DNA from: Magallana gigas
Lineage: Eukaryota
Direction of reading: 5' to 3'
Assembly (NCBI RefSeq): GCF_963853765.1
Contig: NC_088856.1
Location: 44,950,001-45,014,000, forward strand
DNA length: 64,000 nucleotides
The position numbers and the translations under genes were made by a program. A model generated the notes under the pieces. The model was not told the DNA's origin and searched no databases. It worked only from the letters and a program-made list of their open reading frames with translations. Positions 2,513-22,838 of this stretch are shown here, one piece after another. Within the stretch, counting starts at the first letter, position 1. Each line of letters opens with the position of its first letter.

Positions 2513-5500
2513 CTAAATCCTCTTTTTCAGCCAGTTTAGTATGTCATCCTGTACCCTTTGCCTGTCTTCATTTGGTTCCAAAAGTAGCGAATGGTAAAAC
2601 CCTTTGTAAATCTTAAAAGAGAAAAATCATGGTAGCTAGACTTCTATAATTAACGTGAAATCTCACTTCAATTTATCTGTACCATCATAAAACCAGAAGT
2701 ACACTATCAATACTGTTAAATGAATTGAGTTGACGATATGTTTTCACTATCTATTTAATTATAGTTAGATTATTCCGGATTAGACCCTCGTTTTTTATTT
2801 GGCTTTTATATTTTCTGAATTTCAAACCCGATCAAATTTAAAAAAAAACAAACAAACAAGATGGCAGAAGAGAGAATGACAGAGGACATCAGCATCAACA
2901 ACAACGAAATTCAACGATCAGAATCATCTGATAGAGGAGATGTGGAAATTTATCCCTTTCCAGCAATTACAAAATCTAAGGTCTGGGATTTCTACGGTTT
3001 TTACAAAATTAAAGAAGGACCCCCACTGAGAGAGAATTTGGACATGACTAAAGCGGTGTGCAGACTCTGTCTAAAAAAGTATATAAACAAAGGTTGGTAG
3101 ATCAATATGAATAAATAGGTATCAAAATAAATTCCTGATTTTTTTCTAAATAAAGCTATAGAAAAGCTACATTTTATATCATTTTTCTAACCAATTACAG
3201 TAACTGCTACGTACTATTATTGAATTGGTACTTACCAACAAAATTTCTTTAAAACATTTTAGTGTTGCTGTTTTTGCATTTTACAACAAATATTGATTGA
3301 TTTCTTCAAAACAGTTTACACAATATTTGAACACTTGCACTGAAAAAAGATTGGGGCAGTTGGCTTGAAATACTATTTCTCAATTTATCTATTCACATAT
3401 ACTCATACAGGTCCAGTACAATCACTCAATTTAGCTACATACATACTGGCGGGCGACCAGTTCTCGCCGAGTACCATTTCTCGCCAGTACATTGTGACGT
3501 TATTTTTCGTATGTAATTTTATGTGTTGCTAAAATGACGTCACAATGTACTGGCGAGAAATGGCACTCGGCGAGAACTGGTCGCATGCCAGTATAGCTTA
3601 ACTAGCTTGAAAAATTGACAAAGCTTTATCTACTTACAGCTATTTTCTTGTATTTAAGCAATATAACTAAAATTAATTGAATGTATCTGATAAATACAAG
3701 AAAATGGATAAATGCAATAAATTCAGTGAGAAGATACATGTAACTGTAACAATTCAAATAATTTCAGGCAATACATCCCACTTAATGGGCCACATAAAGA
3801 AAGTGCATAGTGAAATGTTCAGCACAGGATCCGTACCGGGTGCTCAAACAACAGCAAAGTCACAAGAGTCTAGAAAATTTAAAAACAGAGAGACTTCAAC
3901 AAATGGAAGGCTATCACAAGACAAGCAGGAACTAATTGACAATACACTGTGTAAATTAATCGCTAGTAGAACAATTTCTCCCAGTGTGGTGGAAGATGAA
4001 TTGTTTCAGACATTTGTGGAGTTGTTGAATCCAAGGTTAGAAACAATATGAATTACTCATGTTACTTTTCTGAAGTTTATCATTAACTGTTCTGAGTGTT
4101 TTTTTCTCCAACAATTACATGTGTAAAAATAAAAATGTTTATCATGTTGAATTTGACCAGTTTAATTGAAAGGATTAATTTTATTTTGAATAAATTCAAT
4201 TGTCAAAATCTGAACCAATTTTTAAAGAAAAATTGAAATTGGATGTATCCTTGTAGGTACAAAATTCCCTCTCAGAATGCCATAATGAGAAGTTTAGAAG
4301 ATCTGTCCACAACTGTATTCATCCATCATGACGCCTGAACAACGTTTTTAACACTCCATCCTGCTTTCCAACAAGTGTGCATAATTTTAAACTCAACTCT
4401 CGAGTGCACTGTTCTTGAAACAATGCAACATGTGCAACTTAAGAAGAAGCGGCTGTATGTGACATCAATGAATATTTCTGAGCAATTCAAAGCCACACAC
4501 CCGATGGAATTTTCCACCTTGACAGACGATGCAGTCAACTTAACTGACAGAAAGCATTTACATCCTTTAAATGTCCTGCTGTGAACTGGGATTGATTGAA
4601 AATCATGGCATAGGGATAAAATCAAATGATATATGATCTCTTAACACTTAAGAAATAAAGCCAATGAGAAAAAGAAAGAACGATTATTAATATATTCATA
4701 GTGCAGTTGTAATGATGACATTTTCAATGTGAAACAGAAGTTGCTTCCATTAGAATATTTAGTTATTCAGGGCCAGAAACATCCATTCAGAGACTTTTAT
4801 GAATGCAATGTACAGTGTCATCACTACATGTAAATTATTAATATTAAAAACATGGTTAATTTAACTAATGTCTTAAGCTTTTCTGCATTGCTCAAGGCAA
4901 ATCAAGTATCCAAATAAAAAATATTATATAAATTGTAACCCTATGTAATGAAGTGTGTTAACATTGAATTTCAACACAAACCAGTACCTCTTTCTATGTA
5001 TTTAAACCAACACATTCATTTCTTATTTTATGCTTGATTATCATTTGGAGTCTTTGATAAAAGATTAGATTCTTTTACAATGTGTATTGGTATTTCCAGT
5101 ACACAACGTTTGTACCTTGATTTCTTTGTCCTCACTCTTGGCCTTGTCGTACAACATTTGGGATCCCTGGACGTCACAAATGGCATCAGCATCTCCGTGG
5201 AGCGCCAAGAATGGAAACTCGATGGACTCCATTCGCTCCTCTATTTTCTTCACGCACTCGATCCAAGCCGATCCCCACCTAAAAGTTTAAAGTATTTTCT
5301 CCCCATAAAAAAAAGTTGCACTCGTAAACAGTTGTTCAAACCTACAGAAAAAGTTTCCTTTAATAAAAGTTTACCCCAACATTCTAATGATAGGGTTATT
5401 TCATCATTATGTATTGGAGAAATCTTATATTGCAGAAACAAGTGCCTGTGTTTTAATCTAAAACTTACACTAGAATGTTTACAAAACACCAGACACTGCG

Positions 5501-8500
5501 ATAGTACAATACTTTGATCAGAATTGTTGTTTTCCAAGTATTAGAAGCATTATTTGCAAACAATGTTGTTGCTTACAGTGTATTAAGCAATTCAAAATCA
5601 AACAAAGCAATAACTGCAGTAAAGCTGACATTGCATGCATGAGAATCACCAAAATGTCTCATCTTTCTGGCTTGGCTTACTTGTATTAAAAATGATAATT
5701 CAGAAAAAAAAAAAAGATTTCAAACATGAACCATAAAGTACATGTCTTAATTGTTTACACAATTAAGATTGGATATTCACTTTATGTAGAAGAATAGGTT
5801 TTATTTTTTTGTTGTTTTAAATTAATTAATATATATCATGTATATCTTATATAAATCAATAGGTTGTATTCATATTCACTTTGTTGTTTAATAACCTACT
5901 TCACTCTGACATACGGATGCACCATAGGGTCCTCTTCATATCTCTTGACCTGTGTTAAAGATTAATATGAAAACAGAATATATATTACATGCGTACATTG
6001 CATAAAAACAGAAAATATATTGCATGCATATTTTTCCATCACTGTACAATTCTCATTAATACTCTGACTATGATCTTATAAAATTCAAACCTAAATGCTT
6101 TATAACAAAATATTCAAACACTGGAATGAAATTTGGCTGTCAGTAAAATACAAGAAAGGAGCAATGATATTGGATACAGATAGAAAATGTAAATGTGCTT
6201 TGGCCCAGATGAGAACAGAGATAGCAATCTTTATGTAAAGCTGACCTAAGGGAAAAAATATCCCATGTAGAGAAAACATTCATTTTATGAAATGGACATT
6301 TTTTTATTCAACATGTTTTTATATAAATGTCCAATTTTTGATTGACATACATTTTATGAAATGGACATTCTTTTATTCAGCAGGTTTTTATATAAATGTT
6401 CAATTTTTGATTGACATACATGTATTTTGGTAAATTATTATTATATAGTTCATCTGACCATCTTCACAGTCATCCGCTTATCATGGGTCCCAATTTTTTT
6501 TATGATATTTAAGACAGGATGAAAAAAAGTTTATAAAGAAAACACAAGAGGAAACACCTTGTTTATTATAACGGTAAGAGGTCAAAGTCATCAAGATTTA
6601 CAAGTAGTTGGAATGATCATAGTTGTGATAAAACAGATGACATGCTGCTAGATATGACAGGAGAAAGAACCTTGTATATTTATTATGTTTAAGTTCAAAG
6701 GTCAAGGTCACTTGGACATATTCATATAAAAGAACAATGTGCTAAAAGTTACTTTTCTTTTACAGAAACTGAACACATCTTCAAAATAATTATTTTCTTG
6801 TAGCTTACATATGGTATTAATTTACACAGTGGTATAATACATTGTATATATACATTATTATTTAAATAGTCAACTTAATAGTATATGCACGTACAAAGGT
6901 TGCAACATCACAAAATACATTGCCAATACATTTTTGCCTACCACACCTTTCAGCAACAACCTTTTACAAGGAGTCAAGGATCATATTTGCCTAAAAAAAG
7001 AGTGAACAAATGTTTGTGATTTCTCATTATTTTGGACCTAATTCATTTGGCAAACCAGAGTCTTCCTATATATATGGACATACAGATATACCTCAAATAC
7101 AATGACTCCTATAGACTTCATGTGCTGGGAAAGGGAGTGGGGGTGTGTGTGAAAAACCTTATATCACATACTGTAGGTGAGGTGCATTGTGCAAATTGCA
7201 TGTATGCCAAGTGAACAAAAAAAAGCCGAAAGAAAGTAGAAGAAAAAAAAACACTGACCTGAATAAGTAATGTAATAGCTAGACCCTGTGTACACCAAAC
7301 TACATGTATGAAATATCATATCACATAGAGGTGCATATTAGCTGAGTTTATTTGTTTCATTTGCAGCAATCATAAGTTAAACTTCCTACTTAGATCAGAC
7401 AAGTATATTCAATTTATTGACCACCCATCTTAGCTACTGTAACAGTGATTTGATCCATCCAACATTCCAAAAGTGTAAAAAAGAGTGCATCACAAAATAT
7501 GGGGAAAAGGGATTAAAGAATGCATAATGTTATACCCATGGTCGAAACACATGTATTTGAGGTGGTTGAAGAGATAATCTTATTCTGTCCCTACAAAAAA
7601 TATTGTCCCTACAAAAAATATTGTTAGTAAAACAGCACTGTCGACTGAATCAATGGCATGCAAGCATTGACTGCAAAACTATAAACAGAACTACAATGCA
7701 TGGTTAGTAAAAAACATGAGAATTCTAAAGTTAATGACTAGAACAAACACTGCATTTGTACAAGCCATTCGCTATCAAAAAACAAACAATAGCACTGATA
7801 GAAAAGTGTAACATTTATATGTAATTTTCCCTTTTTATTTTTTTTTTCTGAAAGAAGGTAATTATGCCAGTGGAAATATTCAGTTCATCACTGGCAATGT
7901 TTCCAAATGAGTACATAGTTTACATACACATTATACATCAAAGTTATTGCTTTAGTTCATATTCTAAAACAAATACTAGTATATATATTACGATCTGTAT
8001 ATTAAACCAATCTCTTCTTATTTGTGACGTCAACTTTATATATGGAATGACTTGGGGTGTACTGGTTTGCGTAATTTTTTCATCTTTCTGACGTCGTATC
8101 AGTAAATGTTTAACAGTAATTTTTAAACAAACTTGAGCCGATTTTCATGATCATATGCTATTTGAAGAAAGATCTGACTAAGACAACAAATGATATTGTT
8201 ACGACCAGTGCCTACATTTATACCTCCTTTAAACCATCATGATGATTTTTAAATATCAACAGGACTGGGAGGTCATGGCCATTTCTTAGCTACATGTATA
8301 TGTAACTCCCTTACATAGAGAGTTCTGCGTAAAAAGGTTTAAATTTTAAACCAATTTTACTAAATAATAGTTTATGGCCAATTATGTTAAAACTTTACTG
8401 CAGATTGTTGGCCACCCAGCACTCTTCATTAAGAAAAGGATGATCATGAATATTGAGGAGACCACAGTCAAAGTTTGTTTACAATCTTAGTTCTACAACA

Positions 8501-10811: not shown

Positions 10812-11126
10812 GATGACGCTAAAAATGAAGTATGATCCCCACCACAGGCGAATTCATTCAAGATTGCGTATTGTTATGATTTACATATTGAATATCGAAC
10901 CCGATGTTAAATGTCGCTTAATGTAGAAAGAGTGACTTCCCTTGTAAATATTGTATGTAAACAAACACGTTGCACCAAATAAACAGGATCATGTTTTAGG
11001 ACGCAGTGCGTGACGGTTATATTCTGGTGTGATCCTGATTTTGCAAGGACTTTTCCCAAAGACCGTTGTCCTCTGAGTTGAGGTTGACTATTTTCTCTTC
11101 TTGACCCGTGATAAAAATTGGTAAGT
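10812..11126. promoter_or_regulatory. Probable bidirectional promoter / 5' UTR region shared by MGLL (-) and the dehydratase (+)
   Basis: The MGLL ATG is at 10811. A strong + strand donor (TTG|GTAAGT) at 11121 could splice to the acceptor at 12364 just upstream of the dehydratase ATG. Confidence 0.5.
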
Positions 11127-12385: not shown

Positions 12386-15300
12386 ATGACGTCAGATGAT
12401 GATGTAGTGACCCTTGAGGACATTGAAAAAGCAAGAGAAGTAGTCATGAAATCACCGCTCAACGTTCGTAAAACGCCCCTTTTGAAAAATATGACGTCAT
12501 ATTTCCCAGAACTGGACCCAAGCATAAATCTACACCTGAAGCTTGAAAGTCTACAAACCACAGGTTAGAAAATTGAGATTGATTTATGTATAATATTAGC
12601 TTTTATTTATAAACGTGCTCGGTTTATGATCTTTTTTATCGGTTGTGGGGGGGGGGGGGGTCCTTGGGGGTTACACTGTATGCGTCTTGGAGATGTATAA
12701 TATACTATAATCTGATTTTTTTTCGATCTATAGGTTCTTTCAAAATACGTGGAGTTGCAAACCAGATGGCAAATCTTCCCCAAGAGGTGAAAAGTGGCAA
12801 AAGGAAGCTGATAACTATGTCAGCAGGGAACTATGGGAAGGCATTTGCATACACATTGGACAAACTTAATCTGTCTGGTCTTTGCTTGATGCCCTTAACG
12901 GCGCCATCAAGCAGGGTAGCCTTAATAAAGGTATGATGTTATAATTATTACAGTGATAACGCCGATATGTTGTTTTATCCTGCATGTTTGTCGAAATTAT
13001 TAATCTATTAGAATTATGAAAAAAAGAAGTTAGCATAGTGTTTTGTGGAAATATTTATGCTTCACAAGGAGAAAATTGTTAAATGATTTAAGGTTAAATT
13101 CTTCAAATTCTACTATAAATTCATTTTTTAATACCTCTGGTCTGAGATGGTTGCTTTACTTCCGAGTGAATGATGATAAGCATGATATCTTCCGTTAATG
13201 ATCAACTATTTGAAAGGAGTTTTCCACTTCAGCAACTCAAAAATTGAAAACAAATTTTAACATCAACTGCAGTCACATTGCCAAAAGCGTCATTAAGCCA
13301 TATTGTAGGAAACATTTCCACTATATGTAGATGCACATGAAGGTAGTAAGAATTCATTACAGATTTATTTACTGTCCAAAATTAGATAATAGCTTGATTG
13401 CACAAACTGAGAAGTTTATTTATTGGGAATTATTAATAATCTTCCCAATCTACTTTCTGTTTGGTTTTATAATTATATAAATAGCAAAGGTACACTTGAC
13501 CTTTCAACCCGTACTCATGTTATCACGTTTGTTATCTTCACATTCGTGTTCGTTATTGATAAAAAAAGTGAAATAGGTAACTTTTCGTTATAGTTAAAGG
13601 TTTCTCTGTTGAATACGATCATACATGTAACTATAAAAGGTGACTTATTAAACACAAAACTGAATCGCATTTCTGTTAGCTGCAATATCATAGCTCTCTC
13701 CGANNNNNNNNNNNNNNNNNNNNNNNNNNNNNNNNNNNNNNNNNNNNNNNNNNNNNNNNNNNNNNNNNNNNNNNNNNNNNNNNNNNNNNNNNNNNNNNNN
13801 NNNNNNNNNNNNNNNNNNNNNNNNNNNNNNNNNNNNNNNNNNNNNNNNNNNNNNNNNNNNNTTGCTGTAACTCCATATTATTGTGAGTTTAATTAAGTAA
13901 AATTATGAAATGCAATTTTACTTTTAGTTAATTTAGTTTGTAAGGGAATTGTAAGGGATACTAGTTGTCCATGCACCCATAGCTGCCCCTTTTGTAATGC
14001 GTCGCATTTATACACACGCACTTGTTACTGCTTAAAGTCTGCCCTAGTCTGACTATAGCGTGCTCCTACTTTTTCACTTTGTTATACAAAGTGTAATAAT
14101 AGGGACTGGCTTTAGTCAGACTGAAGTCTGTCCCAATTTATAATGATAACGGTGTTATTTATTATAATACTCTGGGGTAAACTGTGTCACAGAAACAAGT
14201 GCCCGTGCATATGAAATGCATGTGAAACCTGAAGCCACAATTAATCAGTTGGACTTAGTATAAAACAAAAATATGCTATACATGTAGATATGATAAACTA
14301 GTTATATACAGGGCAGTCGTTTATAAATGCATGCATGGATACGATCCGTATTTCGTGTTTATTTGCATGACAATAAGTGTGCTATTGCGAGTGTGTATCT
14401 GTGATAAAAATCTAATGTTATTGAAGAAATCTCAGTTCCCCCGTCAACGGTCATCAAATTTCGATATCTGATTTAGTTTTAAAATTGTTGAGGCATTCTC
14501 CTTTCATTTATATGTGCCTTTTATAGTTAATGTGCTACATGTTTTGAAAAATATATTTAAAAAAAAACAACACCCGTAGCAGTTGGTCTAAATCATTTAA
14601 TTGACAAAACAGGCCATGAAGATGCGACAAGTCTTTCAAAACATTTTCTTTTGATTTTTTTTTTATCATTATAAATCTTATTATTGTATAGAATTAGCAT
14701 CGTAAGACGGCTTTTTTTTCTTTCTTTTTTTTTGGGGGGGGGGGGGGGGGGGCGAATTGCCAAATAAATTTTATCTTGTTTTTTTTTTACCCTCAATAAG
14801 CACTGACCAATTTTAAAACGCCAAAAGTAAATGTACTGTAAAATAAAATCACGAAATCTTGTATATTTTTATGTAAATAAGAAAATATATTGAAAACTTC
14901 TTACATGTACTATAAAATAATTAACATTATCGAGCATTTGCGACGCATTTTTATTTTGCAAATTTTGTTCTATAATCATCACCGATGTTTACATGTAGTT
15001 TCAGACGTGAAGTTGAAGTGGAAAACTCCTTTTTATCGGTTTTGTTCAACTTATATGCTTGAAACACGTTTCGTTCTCATCGAATTTTGGTCTCTTAATG
15101 TGGACGTTTTTCTTAATGTGCTTGAAAAGTATGCCATTTCTCCTTTTAGAGTTTAGGGGTTTCTGTGGAGCAGTGCCCCACCTCTGAATTAACTAGTGAA
15201 GTAAACAGATATGTCCAGAAAGAGAACTTTATATATTACCACTCCTTTGATGATGCTAGATTGATTGCTGGTTACGGAAGGTATCCACGGAGCTCGACTC

Positions 15301-18300
15301 TTGAACTCTAACCTTTCACCTTACTGAACCTTTAACCCTATTGTGAACTGCTGTGAATTGCAAGAAGAATTACTGTAGAAAGTTATACTTTTGTTCGTTT
15401 CAGGGACGAGAGAAAAATAACTGCATGGGTTTTAAAGCTAATTTTCCCTTCTATGCCAAAACATATTTTTGGTTGAAAAGAGTCAAAATGACGAACTATA
15501 AGTGGAGCATATTCTACAGTAATTCTTTGCCCAATTTTAGTATGTATTAGTTTTTATACCTAGCTATGTATGTATCAGTACAAACGTTTGGTAGAATAGG
15601 GCAAGTGTTTTTAACAAGCTAACTCAAAATTAACTTGGTTACTAACATTGTTACATGTAGCATTTGTTGCACAAGACAAACGATACAGCATCCGTTTAAA
15701 AAAAATCCCGCGACAATCCCGTCCAAAACCAGAGGTTCGATGAAACAAAGTCAGCGCAATAATGTATTTAAGAAACAATAAGCTTAACTTCCGTATTTTC
15801 TGTTAACCTATAGAGCTATGGTTGTGAGGTGGCCATTTATCCGAGCCATGAAATTCAGGCAGCCTTTTCTCAGTATGACGCTCATAACTTCCCTGTCCTT
15901 GATCCAATTGACGACGCGTCGTACATAACAGGCTGCGGCAGGTAACAGAGAGCAACCCCAAGCAAAAATATTGAAGTTTTACATAGGAATCACCCCGAAG
16001 CTTGCTTATAAACACATTTATATGCATTTAAAGGATTACTTATCGTGTACTTGTCATTTTCAAGAACATATGAATTTGATACTTAATATCAGTATAACGC
16101 AAATTGAATAATTGAATATAGATTCATAGTGGTTTCTAAAATACAAAGTCAGTTATTGGAAATTATATATATATATATTTTTGGCATCATGAAGCTAACG
16201 GCAGCTGTGGCAGGTTTTTATTTCATATTTTAATTTTCAATAGAGATAAATTAAATACTGCTCTTGGTTTGTTTTTGTGTCACGCAGACGTGCTCACGTT
16301 TTACAGATTCGATTTAGAAAAAAACAACAACATTTGAACCACGTAGTAAAAATGATGTCGTAAAATTAGGTTAAAAATTAATATCATCATGAATGTGTAG
16401 TCAGTTACAATAATAATAGCAAATTAGGAGTCCCGTATTCCTATCTTTGGGGTAAACCCTCGTTTTGCTGCCCATTCGTTTAAGTTCATAGCCTCATCAA
16501 TGTAATGGAAACAACAAAATACTTGTATACATGTATTTTTGCGTTTGTTTAATGTATATTTTTTGATTCCGTAGGATTAATTAAAGTTGTGGATTCTTAC
16601 TTTTAGTAATTGCAATTCTAGATGATGGAGTCTACGCCCTTTGCATGTATTTCAAACTTCATTATAGTTTTCAAAATTTCACTAATTGTACTTAACATCG
16701 GATGTGTTCGGGATCGGTTGCACAACGTCTCTTTGTTTTAAGAAAGGCAGATAACGAATTTCAAGCAATTCAAAGCCAGTTGTTGCTCTTGGTCTTGGAA
16801 ACCCGAGCAAAGGGACCAGTTTTGTCATAATGAGGCGATTATGTTCTTCTTTTTATTGTCTAAAACTTAGTTTTAGCCTATATTGATTGTCCTTTTGCAA
16901 CACTGTCTATTAATACCACATCTTCATAAATACTAATAAAAAAACAAGGAGATATTACCTACCTTACCAGCATATGCTAGTATATACTTGATTTTCCTGA
17001 GGGAAGAATGGAATGTGTTAACACACTGTTCGCAATAACCTTTGGGTGCAAATCCAAAGCAATGAACATAGGTGTCCTCACAGACCAATTTGCAAGTGAA
17101 AGAAATTATCAGAGTTCTTCAGAGTTAAAAGTGTCTTGAAAGTGTCAACTAATTTTTGATTTTACTCCTTATATGCCACCTTTCTTACGAGTTAGACCCA
17201 TTTTGCCGAGAGCTTTGTCATCCCTGATATAACGATATCTAAGTTAAACGCCATGGGATGAACATGCAGTTATACCTTATAGATATTCTCAATGGTGTCA
17301 TCTAAAATAATATTGATATATATATATGCTTTTACATACTTGTTTATCAGTTGTTAAAGTTTTAAATGCCTTTGCTTAGGAATGGCTACAGTATTTGCCA
17401 GTTCCTCCGAATTTCTGAAGCATTAGAAAGAAGAGTTCTTGACAATTAAGTTTTAAAACACGTTATAATAATAGATTTCCTTTGGTACCATGTCTTTCTT
17501 TTGTAGATTATTTATCCTGATAGTTAGGGCTTCTTTTTTTGTCCATTTGGAATTGTTTCAGGTCACGTACTTTTGATTTAAAATCAGGTGCCTAGGAATC
17601 TTGAATTATTCCTAGCAATAGAAGAAGGGATAGTGTTACTGTTACATAAAGGTTAATTGTGGTTCTGCTATCAATTAAGATGAGGCTAGGAACATTTTGA
17701 TACTACATGGAGTTTTACCCTCGAACATGCAGCAAGAGTTCCTTAACTAAGATTTTTATAGCCCTGTGATTTAATCACAACAGATAAAACCTAGCTTTAC
17801 TGACCAAAATGAAACTCTGAACTTCTAAAGTTTCTTATTTAGTCCCCTCCTTGAACCTCATTCACCCAGTTTGTCTTTGCCCTAACTAATTTTTTTTAGC
17901 ACAGTCTCTCTAGAAAAATGAAAAGGTAATCCTCAAATATCAAATATGCTTTTGTCGCGTCTTGTATTGTTGTTGCTTGATTTTGTTTACAAGTAACCGT
18001 TCATTTTGGTTTCTGTTTTCATTGCATGAGTTTCTGTTTTCACATGTCTAATTTAATATCAGTATTATAATTATGCATTTACAAGTTTGTGTCATGATTT
18101 AACGTTTGAAATATCATGATTTTATATATTAATTTCAAAATTACACTATAATTTCAATATCAAAGAAAGTTCCGTTAACGATACTTTCCAAATTCCAATG
18201 ATTTATCAGACATTTCTTTGTCTAGTGTTGCTATGGAAATTTTGGAAGATGACGTCAGACCTGACGTTGTTGTCGTCTGCTGTGGCGGCGGGGGACTAGT

Positions 18301-19523
18301 TTCGGGAATAGCCGCGGCCATTAAATTGTCCGGGTTGAGGGACTGTAGAATTTATGCAGTAGAACCTGAGGGATGTAAGTCAGAGAAATAGTGCATGTAT
18401 CAGGTACCGTGTTAAAACATTGCGAAGATCGGTTTTCATAACAATTTCTCAAGGTTGCAATGTATCCATGTGAGAGTTGTCTTTCCTATTAGAGGATATT
18501 TATACTTAAATCTCCATTTCATAAATATTCATAATTACATGTGTATAGATGACCCTTATTATCTTATATTAATGAGTTTTATAAATGGAAAACATGTACA
18601 TGGCCTGTCTTATAATCTGAATATCTAAGGCGAAAGTATCTATGACTGTTTATTACTTGACCTTATTCATTATATGAAAGTGAAACATCGTTTCTATAAA
18701 CACAGTATATCTTTGTAGCCCGGACAATGTATGAAAGTTTTCAGAAAGGGGAACCTGTTACAATGGCCGTTAATTCAGTAGCTACAGGGCTATCACCTCC
18801 ATATGCAGGTAATAATCAAAACAATATTCATTAAGAATAAACACACATCTGATGTTGTTGGCAGGCACTTAGCTATGGGGGAGTGGGGGTGGTCACCTCC
18901 CCACCCCCATCCCCACACACTTTTTCTCGTAGCATATAATTTTCTTAATATGACATATGATATTGAATTATCATGGAGTCCCCCCATCTTTTTGTGGACA
19001 TGCAATAGATGGAAGTAAAAATAAGGAATTTAACACAAAAGTTAAAGGTAAAAGAGTACTTCACCCCCACCCCCTTTCCCCTTCCCCATTAAGGTTTTCA
19101 TGTTTTTGAAAACTACCTTTTTTTTTTAATTGTCAAGATTTTTTGGATGCAACTGTTTACACATTTAAAAACGATACAATGCTACGTGCTTGGTTGTTTT
19201 ATATATAAAAAATTATGTTTAGCTGAAAAAATTGATTAAATCTGTATGTAAATTATTTCCTTTCTTTGTTTTTTTTTTTAGGAAAATTAACTTATCAGTG
19301 CTGTCGAAGATATGTAGAAGATGTCATTTTGGTGTCCGATAACGAAATCTTAAAGTGTATGTCAAGACTCTTTGATATTGGGTTAGTGGCCGAACCCTCT
19401 GGCTGTGCTGCTTTGGCGGCCATTTTAAATAATAAGATCCCGGATGTAGCGGGAAAGCGAGTTGTTGCTGTTGTCACCGGAAGTAATGTCACGCTGTCAG
19501 AAATGAGTTCATATATTCAATAA
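12386..19523 (+). CDS. PLP-dependent serine/threonine dehydratase family enzyme (fold type II), 6 coding exons, about 328 aa
   Basis: Exons 12386-12563, 12734-12930, 15150-15280, 18226-18374, 18719-18808, 19282-19523 (987 nt, phases consistent). Motifs: LKLESLQTTGSFKIRG (PLP lysine), SAGNYG, CCGGGGL phosphate loop, AVEP, AEPSG, TGSN. Confidence 0.92.
13704..13861. other. Assembly gap (N run)
   Basis: Run of N. Confidence 1.
14045..14123. mobile_element. 79-bp TIR element with about 10-bp target duplication
   Basis: TAGTCTGACTA...TAGTCAGACTG, flanked by AAGTCTGCCC (14035) and AAGTCTGTCC (14124). Confidence 0.65.
15814..15941 (+). CDS. Alternative (duplicated) exon 3b of the dehydratase gene
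   Basis: Bounded by TATAG| and |GTAACA, 128 nt, phase 0 to 2 like exon 3a. It encodes SYGCEVAIYPSHEIQAAFSQYDAHNFPVLDPIDDASYITGCG(S), which aligns with 3a SLGVSVEQCPTSELTSEVNRYVQKENFIYYHSFDDARLIAGYG(S). Confidence 0.75.
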
Positions 19524-21561: not shown

Positions 21562-22838
21562 ATGGGCGGTGGTGGAAGCTGGCCCAGACAACCGCAAGGT
21601 AGTTTATAAATAAGTGTACTGTTTGTTTTTTATGAAAAATCTAATCGTAATAATATCACTGTAAATAAATAAGGTTGTATTTTTCATAAATTTGATCAAA
21701 ATATTAATTGTCATTTAAAAGGTGCCTCACTACACCTTGAAAAAGTTTCTCAAATCAGCAGAAAATTACTTGATTATGATAGAAAGCATGATGGATAAGA
21801 AGTATTTATGTCAAATAGGCGAAAAAATGTGCAATTTTAGTAAAAAAATGATATTTTCAAAAATTTCATTTAGTAAACATAAACAAAAGCCCCAGGTGGA
21901 TTCGAACTCATGACCTGCAGTTCACAAGCCTGATACTTTAACCACTGAGCTATGACGATATACATTTGAATCGATTGATACAAACAGTTTAACAAAACAT
22001 TTAAATCGCCATCTTGTGACGTAGTGTCTTAAAAAGTATAAGTCTCGGTGTAGTGAAGTACCTTTAGTTAATTAAAAAGCTCAATGATAAAACATCGAAC
22101 GATGCAGATTTATGGTAATATCCATTCGACATTTATGTCAATAGGAATTGTTACTGAATCTATTTTGGGTCCAACTACAAATGTGACCTCAACATCTGGA
22201 TTTGCAGATACTTTCAGTGTTCCATTGTCAGGTATTTTCTAATGAGGCTTTTTTTGTATTGATATTGAAAAGGGTATTTTTATACATAATTTTTGATAAA
22301 TATGCAAACATAAGAATCCTTTTATCATAATCGGAAATCAGCTACAGTGGAACGGATCTTATAGGCATTTATCGTGAATCTGAATTAAATTATGGCATGC
22401 TTTTTCTAAAGACTTTGAAATTATAATTATGTCACTTGATTTTTAACAATTGAAATATATTAAATTTTAGTAATTCGCCTTCTCATAAGATTTATTCAGT
22501 GTTATCAACTAATTGATTAGGATTTGAATTGGTAGACAAAAAATGTTCCTGATACTTACAAACGTAAAGTCATCACTATTTCTAAGGATCTCTTAAATGA
22601 GAAATGAAAATACCAGTCGCTGATGTGCCCTTATATGTTCATCGTTTTGAGAATTTATTATACTAGTAATGCCTTTTTAAAAATCATTTAACGAAAGTTA
22701 GCAAACTTTTCTATTAGCGTCAAAAGTATTATTTTGTAAAATCTGTAATGTTTGTATATCAAATGGATTGATAGAATGAACTTTTAGATATGACTTCAAC
22801 ATTTTGATTTGCAGATAACTACAGTGATCCGTTCGCAG
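21562..22838 (+). CDS. Partial gene A: MGGGGS-type first exon plus two small phase-1 exons; no downstream exons found
   Basis: Candidate exons 21562-21598 (MGGGGSWPRQPQ), 22145-22231 (S/T-rich) and 22815-22838, all with GT-AG borders in phase 1. Confidence 0.4.
21719..22064. mobile_element. TIR element (GGTACCTCACTACACC-type ends, TTAA-like flanks, possibly Kolobok-type) containing a tRNA-derived segment
   Basis: TIRs at 21719-21736 and 22047-22064. The minus strand at 21889-21957 reads TAGCTCAGTGG (A box) ...CTTGTGA... GTTCGAATC (B box). Confidence 0.7.

What the first reader, a model, noticed from the sequence alone, without database searches (positions are those of the whole stretch)
15150..15941. 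Probable mutually exclusive exons in a PLP dehydratase that swap a substrate-specificity loop
Seen: two homologous exons, 3a (15150-15280, 131 nt) and 3b (15814-15941, 128 nt), both phase 0 to 2 with intact splice sites and open frames. Including both, or neither, shifts the frame. They share the G.xV..P..E...DDA..I.G.GS scaffold but differ at the HPxDD-type loop (HSFDD versus DPIDD). Known: the equivalent loop (about residues 150-154, the triple-serine loop) modulates substrate and racemase specificity in the serine/aspartate racemase family. Inference: one gene may yield two enzymes of different specificity by splicing. The ORF track misses exon 3b entirely.
Basis: partly seen in the sequence, partly recalled or inferred. 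Interest (0 to 1): 0.82.

Follow-up and report, generated by a model that had tools for sequence, protein, structure and literature searches.

The report
Swappable exon pair in oyster dehydratase
A Pacific oyster gene for a vitamin-B6-dependent serine/threonine dehydratase-like enzyme carries two alternative versions of one exon; RNA shows both in use, one at a time, and oysters, pearl oysters, mussels and scallops all keep the pair, but both isoforms are already in RefSeq and what they do differently is untested.

Summary
Exons 3a (15150-15280) and 3b (15814-15941) are homologous, have AG/GT splice sites, and have lengths of 2 mod 3. Using one of them gives a 328 or 327 aa PALP enzyme. Using both or neither shifts the frame.

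RNA supports both exons. A 1184-nt transcript contig runs E2-3b-E4. Junction reads in three polyA runs total 10 for E2>3a, 3 for 3a>E4 and 6 for 3b>E4.

Both isoforms are already in RefSeq for Magallana gigas (XP_034305835 X1, XP_034305838 X2), so the splicing event itself is not new. I found no paper on it.

- The pair, in the same order, is intact in Saccostrea, Pinctada, Mytilus and Mizuhopecten. It is absent from Mactra and Sinanodonta.
- 3a is the canonical metazoan form (dN/dS 0.04). 3b evolves faster but is still constrained (0.36).
- The exon encodes a strand-helix-strand unit plus the loop equivalent to the serine racemase "triple serine loop".

The enzyme has Ala where racemases have the re-face Ser, so it looks like a dehydratase, not a racemase. 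The HSF versus DPI loop difference is confined to the oyster order. The only 3b-wide mark is Cys129. A functional switch is plausible but unproven.

The parts
10955..11117 (+). Non-coding 5' UTR exon of the gene
   Evidence: The first 163 nt of transcript contig L001 align here at 99.4% and then jump to about 12360.
12386..12563 (+). Coding exon 1: ATG to the donor ACAG|gt
12734..12930 (+). Exon 2, constant. It carries the Schiff-base Lys63 (SFKIRG) and the S89-A90-G91-N92 loop, and ends in phase 0.
   Evidence: The PDB alignments place Lys63 and the SAGN loop.
15150..15280 (+). Exon 3a (131 nt), the canonical metazoan form. It encodes residues 126-169 of isoA: strand 130-134, helix 136-149, strand 152-154, loop H156-S157-F158-D159-D160, and the start of helix 161-176.
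   Evidence: Junction reads: E2>3a 3/6/1 and 3a>E4 2/1/0 in runs X20/X21/X22, plus one contig in X5. Outgroup profile 76.8 bits. AF2 secondary structure. dN/dS 0.04 against Saccostrea.
15281..15813 (+). Intron of 533 nt between the two alternative exons
   Evidence: It does not align with the Saccostrea intron. It holds a 25-nt imperfect hairpin, 15356-15380 with 15512-15536, whose function was not tested.
15814..15941 (+). Exon 3b (128 nt), the alternative form. It encodes the same structural module, with Cys129, loop D-P-I-D-D and ...TGCGS.
   Evidence: Transcript contig L001 (SRR11285542) splices E2-3b-E4 exactly. 3b>E4 junction reads are 2/3/1 in X20/X21/X22, and an X5 contig starting at 15812 carries the end of E2. 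Outgroup profile 26.4 bits, E 9e-7. dN/dS 0.36. It is a conserved island against Saccostrea (15793-15945, 73%).
18226..18374 (+). Exon 4, constant, with the Gly-rich phosphate loop GGGG (residues 189-192)
18719..18808 (+). Exon 5, constant
19282..19523 (+). Exon 6, constant, ending in the stop codon TAA

Best explanation
This is a tandem-duplicated, mutually exclusive exon pair in the Magallana (Crassostrea) gigas gene that RefSeq names 'L-threonine dehydratase catabolic TdcB'. The protein is a fold-type II PLP enzyme of the Ser/Thr dehydratase and serine racemase superfamily.

Shown here:
- Every mature mRNA seen carries either 3a or 3b.
- Both exons are 2 mod 3, so double inclusion or double skipping shifts the frame and creates early stops.
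- All invariant catalytic elements lie in constant exons: Lys63, the S-A-G-N loop and the GGGG loop.
- The swapped 43-44 residues are one structural cassette: strand, helix, strand, the loop that sits above the PLP-imine in serine racemase (hSR 152-155), and the first turn of the next helix.
- 3a is the ancestral form shared with other animals. 3b is a faster-evolving copy that is still under purifying selection.
- Oysters, pearl oysters, mussels and scallops all keep 3b with intact splice sites.

Inferred, not shown:
- Frameshifted double-inclusion or double-skip transcripts are removed by nonsense-mediated decay.
- The two isoforms are both active dehydratase-type enzymes that differ in substrate preference, kinetics or regulation through the changed small-domain cassette.
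- Racemisation is unlikely, because the re-face Ser is Ala.
For: - Exon anatomy and frames.
- Both exact isoforms are in RefSeq (X1, X2) and in about 1.1-1.2 kb RNA contigs.
- Spliced 3b transcript L001.
- Junction reads for E2>3a, 3a>E4 and 3b>E4, with no 3a>3b joint listed.
- Both isoforms pass Pfam PALP.
- AF2 gives pLDDT 94.7 and 93.4 with the same secondary structure across the cassette.
- 3b is homologous to exon 3 by an outgroup-only profile (E 9e-7).
- Intact 3a and 3b, in the same order, in Saccostrea echinata, Mytilus galloprovincialis, Pinctada imbricata and Mizuhopecten yessoensis.
- 3b isoforms are annotated in C. virginica, two Saccostrea species and four Mytilus species.
- A single exon 3 in Mactra and Sinanodonta.
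- dN/dS is 0.04 for 3a, 0.36 for 3b and 0.04 for the constant exons.
- 3a and 3b are the only alignable islands in the E2-E4 interval between Crassostrea and Saccostrea.
- Loop mapping to hSR H152-Q155: with PMC6424897.
Against: - No enzymology exists for either isoform, so the functional difference is pure inference.
- In Crassostrea 3b the His that is conserved in 111 of 113 canonical sequences is Asp, and in Pinctada 3b the DD pair is SE. Some 3b forms could therefore be catalytically altered or weakened rather than re-specified.
- Read counts are small: 19 junction reads in all, from three runs of unknown tissue. Relative usage is only a rough figure.
- Absence of 3a+3b transcripts is not proven. 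The listing threshold was 3 reads.
- dS between Crassostrea and Saccostrea is near saturation (0.7-1.0), so the dN/dS values are approximate.
- NMD of frameshifted forms was not tested.
Confidence: 0.85

Rival explanations
1. Isoform B is not a re-specified enzyme. It is a weakened or inactive subunit that modulates the enzyme, for example by forming heterodimers with isoform A or by changing stability or allostery. On this view the exon switch tunes activity rather than substrate choice.
For: The nearly invariant His156 is Asp in Crassostrea 3b and Gln in Pinctada 3b, and the DD pair is lost in Pinctada. 3b evolves about nine times faster in dN/dS than 3a. The 3b sequences differ widely between orders (28-44% identity), which fits a relaxed or regulatory role better than one conserved new specificity. 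Solved homologues such as TdcB and serine racemase are dimers (general knowledge).
Against: Saccostrea, Mytilus and Mizuhopecten 3b keep His and DD. The AF2 model of isoB is as confident as that of isoA. isoB scores slightly higher than isoA against S. pombe SR (146.5 versus 138.8 bits) and against the threo-3-hydroxy-L-aspartate ammonia-lyase model (191.9 versus 186.1 bits), so it still looks like an enzyme.
Confidence: 0.15
2. [quoted passage not shown]
For: The loop equivalent to hSR 152-155 lies inside the exon and differs between 3a and 3b in C. gigas (HSFD versus DPID). Mutations in this loop shift the balance between racemisation and elimination, and between Asp and Ser, in SR and AR (PMC6424897).
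Against: The re-face base Ser84 is Ala90, in a constant exon. Arg135 and Asp216 are also absent. S84A abolishes racemisation (PMC6424897). The best matches are dehydratases (TdcB 2gn0, NCBIfam threonine ammonia-lyase models). The loop difference is absent in the Mytilus and Mizuhopecten 3b exons.
Confidence: 0.08
3. Exon 3b is a decaying duplicate that is spliced in only as noise, so the X2 isoform has no function.
For: 3b diverges fast. The sequence cluster holding isoform A (84 members) is larger than the one holding isoform B (9 members) in the protein collection.
Against: The open frame, both splice sites and the 2 mod 3 length are kept in five genera of three orders. dN/dS of 0.36 is below 1. 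3b is a conserved island in otherwise unalignable introns. 3b>E4 junction reads (6) are not fewer than 3a>E4 reads (3) in the runs sampled.
Confidence: 0.02

Closest known systems
RefSeq isoforms X1 (XP_034305835) and X2 (XP_034305838) of Magallana gigas 'L-threonine dehydratase catabolic TdcB', with matching X1/X2 pairs in C. virginica, Saccostrea and Mytilus
   Same: They are identical to the two proteins built here from the window (exact look-up). The same 3a/3b alternation is annotated in other bivalves.
   Different: These are automatic annotation only. I found no paper on the splicing event, its age, the structural module it swaps or the function. Older UniProt models (K1QWD3, A0A8W8LNF0) wrongly string both exons together.
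COQ-2 a/e mutually exclusive exons in helminths, annelids and molluscs (PMC7434440)
   Same: Both are homologous, mutually exclusive exons inside a metabolic enzyme. One is the pan-eukaryotic form and the other a lineage-restricted variant that remodels the catalytic core. Both occur in molluscs, including oysters.
   Different: For COQ-2 the switch is proven genetically (ubiquinone versus rhodoquinone), and two residue changes are invariant in all e-exons. Here nothing is tested, and only one residue (Cys129) marks all 3b exons.
Serine racemase / aspartate racemase 'triple serine loop' (hSR H152-P153-N154-Q155; SSS in bivalve AspR; PMC6424897)
   Same: The fold and the loop position are the same. 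The loop lies inside the swapped exon.
   Different: This protein lacks the re-face Ser84, Arg135 and the Asp216 metal ligand. It is a separate metazoan clade annotated as threonine ammonia-lyase or phenylserine dehydratase-like.
Catabolic threonine dehydratase TdcB (PDB 2gn0) and related bacterial Ser/Thr dehydratases
   Same: TdcB is the best solved-structure match for both isoforms (1.8e-43 and 3.3e-42). It shares the SAGN loop with Ala at the SR Ser84 position, and a P-Y-D-D type loop that resembles 3b of Saccostrea.
   Different: The NCBIfam TdcB equivalog scores 201 and 197 bits against a cut-off of 453, so neither isoform is a TdcB equivalog. The substrate is unknown.

Membership tests
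Tandem-duplicated mutually exclusive exons (MXE cluster) | Neighbouring exons are homologous to each other | tested here: met
   14 of 43 residues are identical. An outgroup-only profile hits 3b full length at E 9e-7.
Tandem-duplicated mutually exclusive exons (MXE cluster) | Same phase, splice sites intact, and inclusion of both or neither breaks the frame | tested here: met
   The exons are 131 and 128 nt, both 2 mod 3, with AG/GT on both. The translations with both exons and with neither have early stops. The same holds in four other genera.
Tandem-duplicated mutually exclusive exons (MXE cluster) | Transcripts carry exactly one of the two exons | tested here: met
   L001 is E2-3b-E4. E2>3a, 3a>E4 and 3b>E4 joints were read, and no 3a>3b joint was listed. 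Absence of rare double-inclusion RNAs is not proven.
Tandem-duplicated mutually exclusive exons (MXE cluster) | A defined exclusion mechanism: competing RNA pairing, steric hindrance, incompatible spliceosomes, or frame plus NMD | tested here: inconclusive
   The frame logic fits NMD. The 533-nt intron rules out steric hindrance. No intronic pairing elements are conserved against Saccostrea. Inverted repeats exist but were not tested.
Fold-type II PLP enzymes (Pfam PALP, PF00291) | Profile match above the gathering score over the whole domain | tested here: met
   219.4 bits (isoA) and 207.5 bits (isoB) against a cut-off of 35, covering profile positions 5-295 of 295.
Fold-type II PLP enzymes (Pfam PALP, PF00291) | Schiff-base Lys, S-x-G-N loop and Gly-rich phosphate loop | tested here: met
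   K63, S89, G91, N92 and G189 are invariant and G190-G192 nearly invariant (90% or more) in the 60-sequence alignment. They align with the same motifs of TdcB and SR.
Serine/aspartate racemase family | Re-face catalytic Ser (hSR Ser84) | tested here: not met
   It aligns to Ala90. S84A loses racemisation (PMC6424897).
Serine/aspartate racemase family | Arg135 and the divalent-metal ligand Asp216 | tested here: not met
   Arg135 aligns to Thr140 in 3a; the 3b residue, Gln, is read from the exon alignment. Asp216 aligns to Thr221, while Glu210 is kept as Glu215.
TdcB (NCBIfam NF006389 equivalog) | Score above the curated cut-off | tested here: not met
   201.2 and 197.3 bits against a cut-off of 453. 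No NCBIfam model reaches its cut-off.

The most novel reading that the evidence does not exclude
The strand-helix-strand-loop cassette of this animal dehydratase family may be a recurrent target for exon-level diversification. An old alternative exon (Pteriomorphia-wide, or gained in parallel in oysters, mussels and scallops) would then give two enzymes with different substrate or reaction preferences from one gene. An apparently separate alternative version of the same segment exists in amphioxus, and Solemya has reached two versions by duplicating the whole gene. If the isoforms prove to have distinct substrates, for example Thr or Ser versus hydroxy- or acidic amino acids, linked to tissue or to hypoxia, this would be a second COQ-2-like case of metabolic rewiring by exon choice in molluscs.
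Probability: 0.3. Interest if true: 0.7.

Novelty: new member of a known kind. Interest (0 to 1): 0.45.

Why it matters
Mutually exclusive exons that swap part of an enzyme's active site are few, and few are understood; COQ-2 is the clearest case. This one is a clean, testable example:

- One small soluble PLP enzyme comes in two natural versions of the lid and loop module that controls reaction choice in the related serine racemase.
- The pair has been kept across Pteriomorphia.
- An apparently parallel event exists in amphioxus.

The case offers a natural experiment on how the small-domain cassette sets specificity in fold-type II enzymes. It may also bear on bivalve amino-acid catabolism.

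Two facts limit its weight. The isoforms are already in RefSeq, and no functional difference has been shown.

Tried and rejected
1. The look-up of encoding contigs failed for the shorter X2 isoforms and for C. virginica and Pecten maximus. That index holds only the longest product of a gene. I used the X1 or longest products instead. No C. virginica genomic locus was obtained.

2. A region-limited homology search with the Mytilus 3b segment found only itself and one 3a-type protein. It gave no new 3b carriers, and Arcida were not sampled.

3. I looked for conserved intronic docking or selector pairings. The introns between Crassostrea and Saccostrea do not align at all. The inverted repeats found in C. 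gigas alone cannot be judged.

4. I tested whether 3b had a single origin. The ML tree unites all 3b exons (support 88/82). AU tests do not reject separate duplications in mussels, scallops and oysters (p 0.34-0.45). With 44 columns and long 3b branches the question stays open. Cys129 is present in 7 of 7 3b exons against 3 of 113 canonical sequences, and the exon order is constant; both favour one origin or convergent selection.

5. A further exon copy (3c) in the window: none found.

6. Literature searches for the gene, its accessions, or MXE plus oyster plus dehydratase found nothing specific.

7. The earlier scan notes near this place concern a Polinton elsewhere in the window and do not bear on this gene.

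Full report
**What is in the sequence**

The gene lies on the + strand. Its coding exons are E1 12386-12563, E2 12734-12930, then 3a (15150-15280, 131 nt) or 3b (15814-15941, 128 nt), E4 18226-18374, E5 18719-18808 and E6 19282-19523. All have AG/GT boundaries. A non-coding first exon lies at 10955-11117.

Splicing in 3a gives a 328 aa protein (isoA). Splicing in 3b gives 327 aa (isoB). Using both exons or neither shifts the frame and produces early stops.

**Are the two exons homologous beyond chance?**

The peptides share 14 of 43 residues, which alone is weak (E about 1.3 within the window). I built a profile from 100 exon-3 segments of non-pteriomorph animals, so it holds no 3b information. 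It hits 3a at 76.8 bits and 3b at 26.4 bits (E 9e-7) over its full length, and nothing else in the window.

Both isoforms match Pfam PALP end to end, at 219.4 and 207.5 bits. AlphaFold2 models both confidently (pLDDT 94.7 and 93.4). The secondary structure across the swapped part is the same: strand 130-134, helix 136-149, a short strand, a loop at about 155-160, and the start of helix 161-176.

**Is 3b used?**

Yes.

- An exact look-up shows that both proteins are already RefSeq entries for Magallana (Crassostrea) gigas: XP_034305835 (isoform X1, equal to isoA) and XP_034305838 (isoform X2, equal to isoB), named 'L-threonine dehydratase catabolic TdcB'. Both also occur as complete ORFs on RNA contigs of about 1.1-1.2 kb.
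- One such contig, L001 from SRR11285542 (1184 nt), aligns to the window as UTR exon, E1, E2, 3b, E4, E5, E6 with exact junctions.
- I laid three polyA RNA runs and one contig set on 12700-18400. Junction reads in runs X20/X21/X22 were: E2>3a 3/6/1, 3a>E4 2/1/0 (plus an X5 contig), and 3b>E4 2/3/1.
- X5 contigs that begin at 15148 and at 15812 both carry the last 16 nt of E2.
- No 3a>3b joint was listed.

The numbers are small and the tissues unknown. In these runs 3b is not a trace form.

**Which family?**

The best solved relatives are catabolic threonine dehydratase TdcB (2gn0, 1.8e-43), followed by serine racemases and IlvA. No NCBIfam model reaches its curated cut-off; TdcB scores 201 bits against 453. 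The RefSeq name therefore rests on resemblance only.

The alignment to rat serine racemase, which shares human numbering, gives these equivalences:

| Serine racemase residue | This protein |
|---|---|
| Lys56 | Lys63 |
| Ser84 (re-face base) | Ala90 |
| Arg135 | Thr140 in 3a (Gln in 3b, read from the exon alignment) |
| His152-Pro153-Asn154-Gln155 | His156-Ser157-Phe158-Asp159 in 3a; Asp-Pro-Ile-Asp in 3b |
| Asp216 (metal ligand) | Thr221 |

PMC6424897 reports three relevant points. S84A abolishes racemisation while elimination persists. Arg135 positions acidic substrates. The 152-155 loop, the 'triple serine loop', sits just above the PLP-imine and tunes racemisation against elimination and Asp against Ser.

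But the enzyme has the dehydratase signature (S-A-G-N, as in TdcB and IlvA) and lacks the racemase hallmarks.

isoB scores higher than isoA against S. pombe SR, which has a P-P-Y loop (146.5 versus 138.8 bits). It also scores slightly higher against the threo-3-hydroxy-L-aspartate ammonia-lyase model (191.9 versus 186.1 bits), while most other scores fall. This is a hint, not a result.

**Evolution**

Across 113 homologues from cnidarians to fishes, the 3a type is the canonical form...G-V-x-V-E-[QRK]-x-P...H-[SP]-[FY]-D-D...A-G-[YH]-[GA]-S.

The 3b type is annotated as an isoform in C. virginica, Saccostrea echinata and S. cucullata, and in Mytilus galloprovincialis, M. californianus, M. trossulus and M. 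edulis.

In genomic DNA I found both exons, always with 3a upstream of 3b, in these four species. All have AG/GT sites and lengths of 2 mod 3.

| Species (locus) | 3a | 3b |
|---|---|---|
| S. echinata (L003) | 3771-3901 | 4337-4464 |
| M. galloprovincialis (L002) | 4906-5036 | 6194-6324 |
| Pinctada imbricata (L004) | 12682-12812 | 18364-18491 |
| Mizuhopecten yessoensis (L006) | 8274-8404 | 13599-13729 |

The heterodont Mactra antiquata (L005) and the unionid Sinanodonta woodiana (L007) have a single exon 3 and no 3b-like sequence before E4.

An ML tree of 33 exon-3 peptides joins all 3b exons with support 88/82, and joins oyster plus Pinctada 3b with support 98/93. With 44 columns and long 3b branches, however, AU tests do not reject separate duplications in mussels, scallops and oysters (p 0.34-0.45).

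Cys at residue 129 occurs in 7 of 7 3b exons but in only 3 of 113 canonical sequences. That argues for one origin in the pteriomorph ancestor, or else for convergent selection.

**Selection**

Between C. gigas and S. echinata, dN/dS is 0.04 for 3a, 0.36 for 3b and 0.04 for the constant exons. dS is near saturation, so these values are rough.

In the whole E2-E4 interval, only 3a (84%) and 3b (73%) align between the two oysters. 3b is therefore constrained, but much less tightly than 3a. It differs widely between orders, at 28-44% identity.

**What differs between the forms**

Saccostrea 3b has HPYDD and Pinctada has QPHSE. Mytilus and Mizuhopecten 3b keep HSFDD.

Cys129 for Val at the start of the strand is the only change shared by every 3b. 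Two further changes are frequent but not universal:
- loss of the E-[QRK] pair at 132-133, though Mytilus keeps Glu132;
- a changed helix face, with position 143 shifting from Val to Phe, Ile, Met or Leu.

Any ancestral functional difference therefore lies more probably in the strand-helix part of the small domain. The loop change is a later addition within the oyster order (Ostreida).

In Crassostrea 3b the His conserved in 111 of 113 sequences is Asp. This is a radical change next to the cofactor.

**Mechanism proposed**

- *Shown:* one gene gives two mRNAs that differ by one homologous cassette, and the frame logic forbids productive use of both exons or neither.
- *Inferred:* aberrant combinations are cleared by NMD. 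The 533-nt intron excludes steric hindrance, and no conserved RNA pairing elements could be identified.
- *Inferred:* both products are PLP dehydratase-type enzymes that differ in substrate or reaction preference, kinetics or regulation.

The main rival is that isoB is a weakened or regulatory subunit. The 'dead exon' reading is effectively excluded.

**Novelty**

The two isoforms are already public through automatic RefSeq annotation. I found no paper on this gene or its splicing.

The closest described analogue in kind is the COQ-2 a/e exon switch of helminths, annelids and molluscs (PMC7434440).

I rate it as a new, well-supported member of a known kind, of moderate interest until the isoforms are assayed.

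Noticed in passing
Proteins P0059 and P0069 (Branchiostoma lanceolatum): The two amphioxus proteins are identical except in the segment homologous to exon 3 (about residues 128-167) and three scattered residues. The X2 form lacks the His and one Asp of the loop. This looks like a separate mutually exclusive exon at the same place in a chordate.
   Followed up: partly
L006 (Mizuhopecten yessoensis) 6728-8316 and 5426-6009: The intron upstream of scallop exon 3a holds about 20 tandem 77-bp units. Each contains the acceptor site and the first 14 codons or so of exon 3a (GYGVEVEQLPTSDL). A second 77-bp array lies further upstream. This is a satellite built from an exon 5' end, so it provides many decoy acceptor sites.
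   Followed up: partly
Proteins P0041 and P0043 (Solemya velum, neighbouring genes 007529 and 007530): The protobranch Solemya has two tandem whole-gene copies that are 70% identical. It reaches two versions by gene duplication rather than exon duplication. The second copy ends its exon-3 segment in A-G-C, like the oyster 3b exons.
   Followed up: no
window 15878: All reads in all four runs, and most isoform-B proteins from RNA contigs, have C where the window has A. This turns Asp into Ala in 3b (SQYD... to SQYA...). The reference allele therefore appears to be the rarer one.
   Followed up: partly
window 13213-13231 / 15014-15032, and 15356-15380 / 15512-15536: A perfect 19-nt inverted repeat lies within intron 2, 1.8 kb apart. 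A 25-nt inverted repeat (84% complementary) lies inside the 3a-3b intron. They could affect exon choice or be transposon remnants. They are not conserved in Saccostrea.
   Followed up: no
Proteins P0025, P0031 and P0018; window about 22084-22242: The older UniProt models A0A8W8LNF0 (395 aa) and K1QWD3 (507 aa) string 3a and 3b together through retained intron sequence. The C. angulata model XP_052677380 (525 aa) fuses this gene to the downstream gene, whose first coding part matches the window ORF at 22084-22242. All three are annotation artefacts.
   Followed up: partly
window 12931-18225 in run X5: Contigs from an RNA library cover much of the introns (15251-17821) at a depth of 20-50, which suggests pre-mRNA or DNA carry-over in that run.
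   Followed up: no
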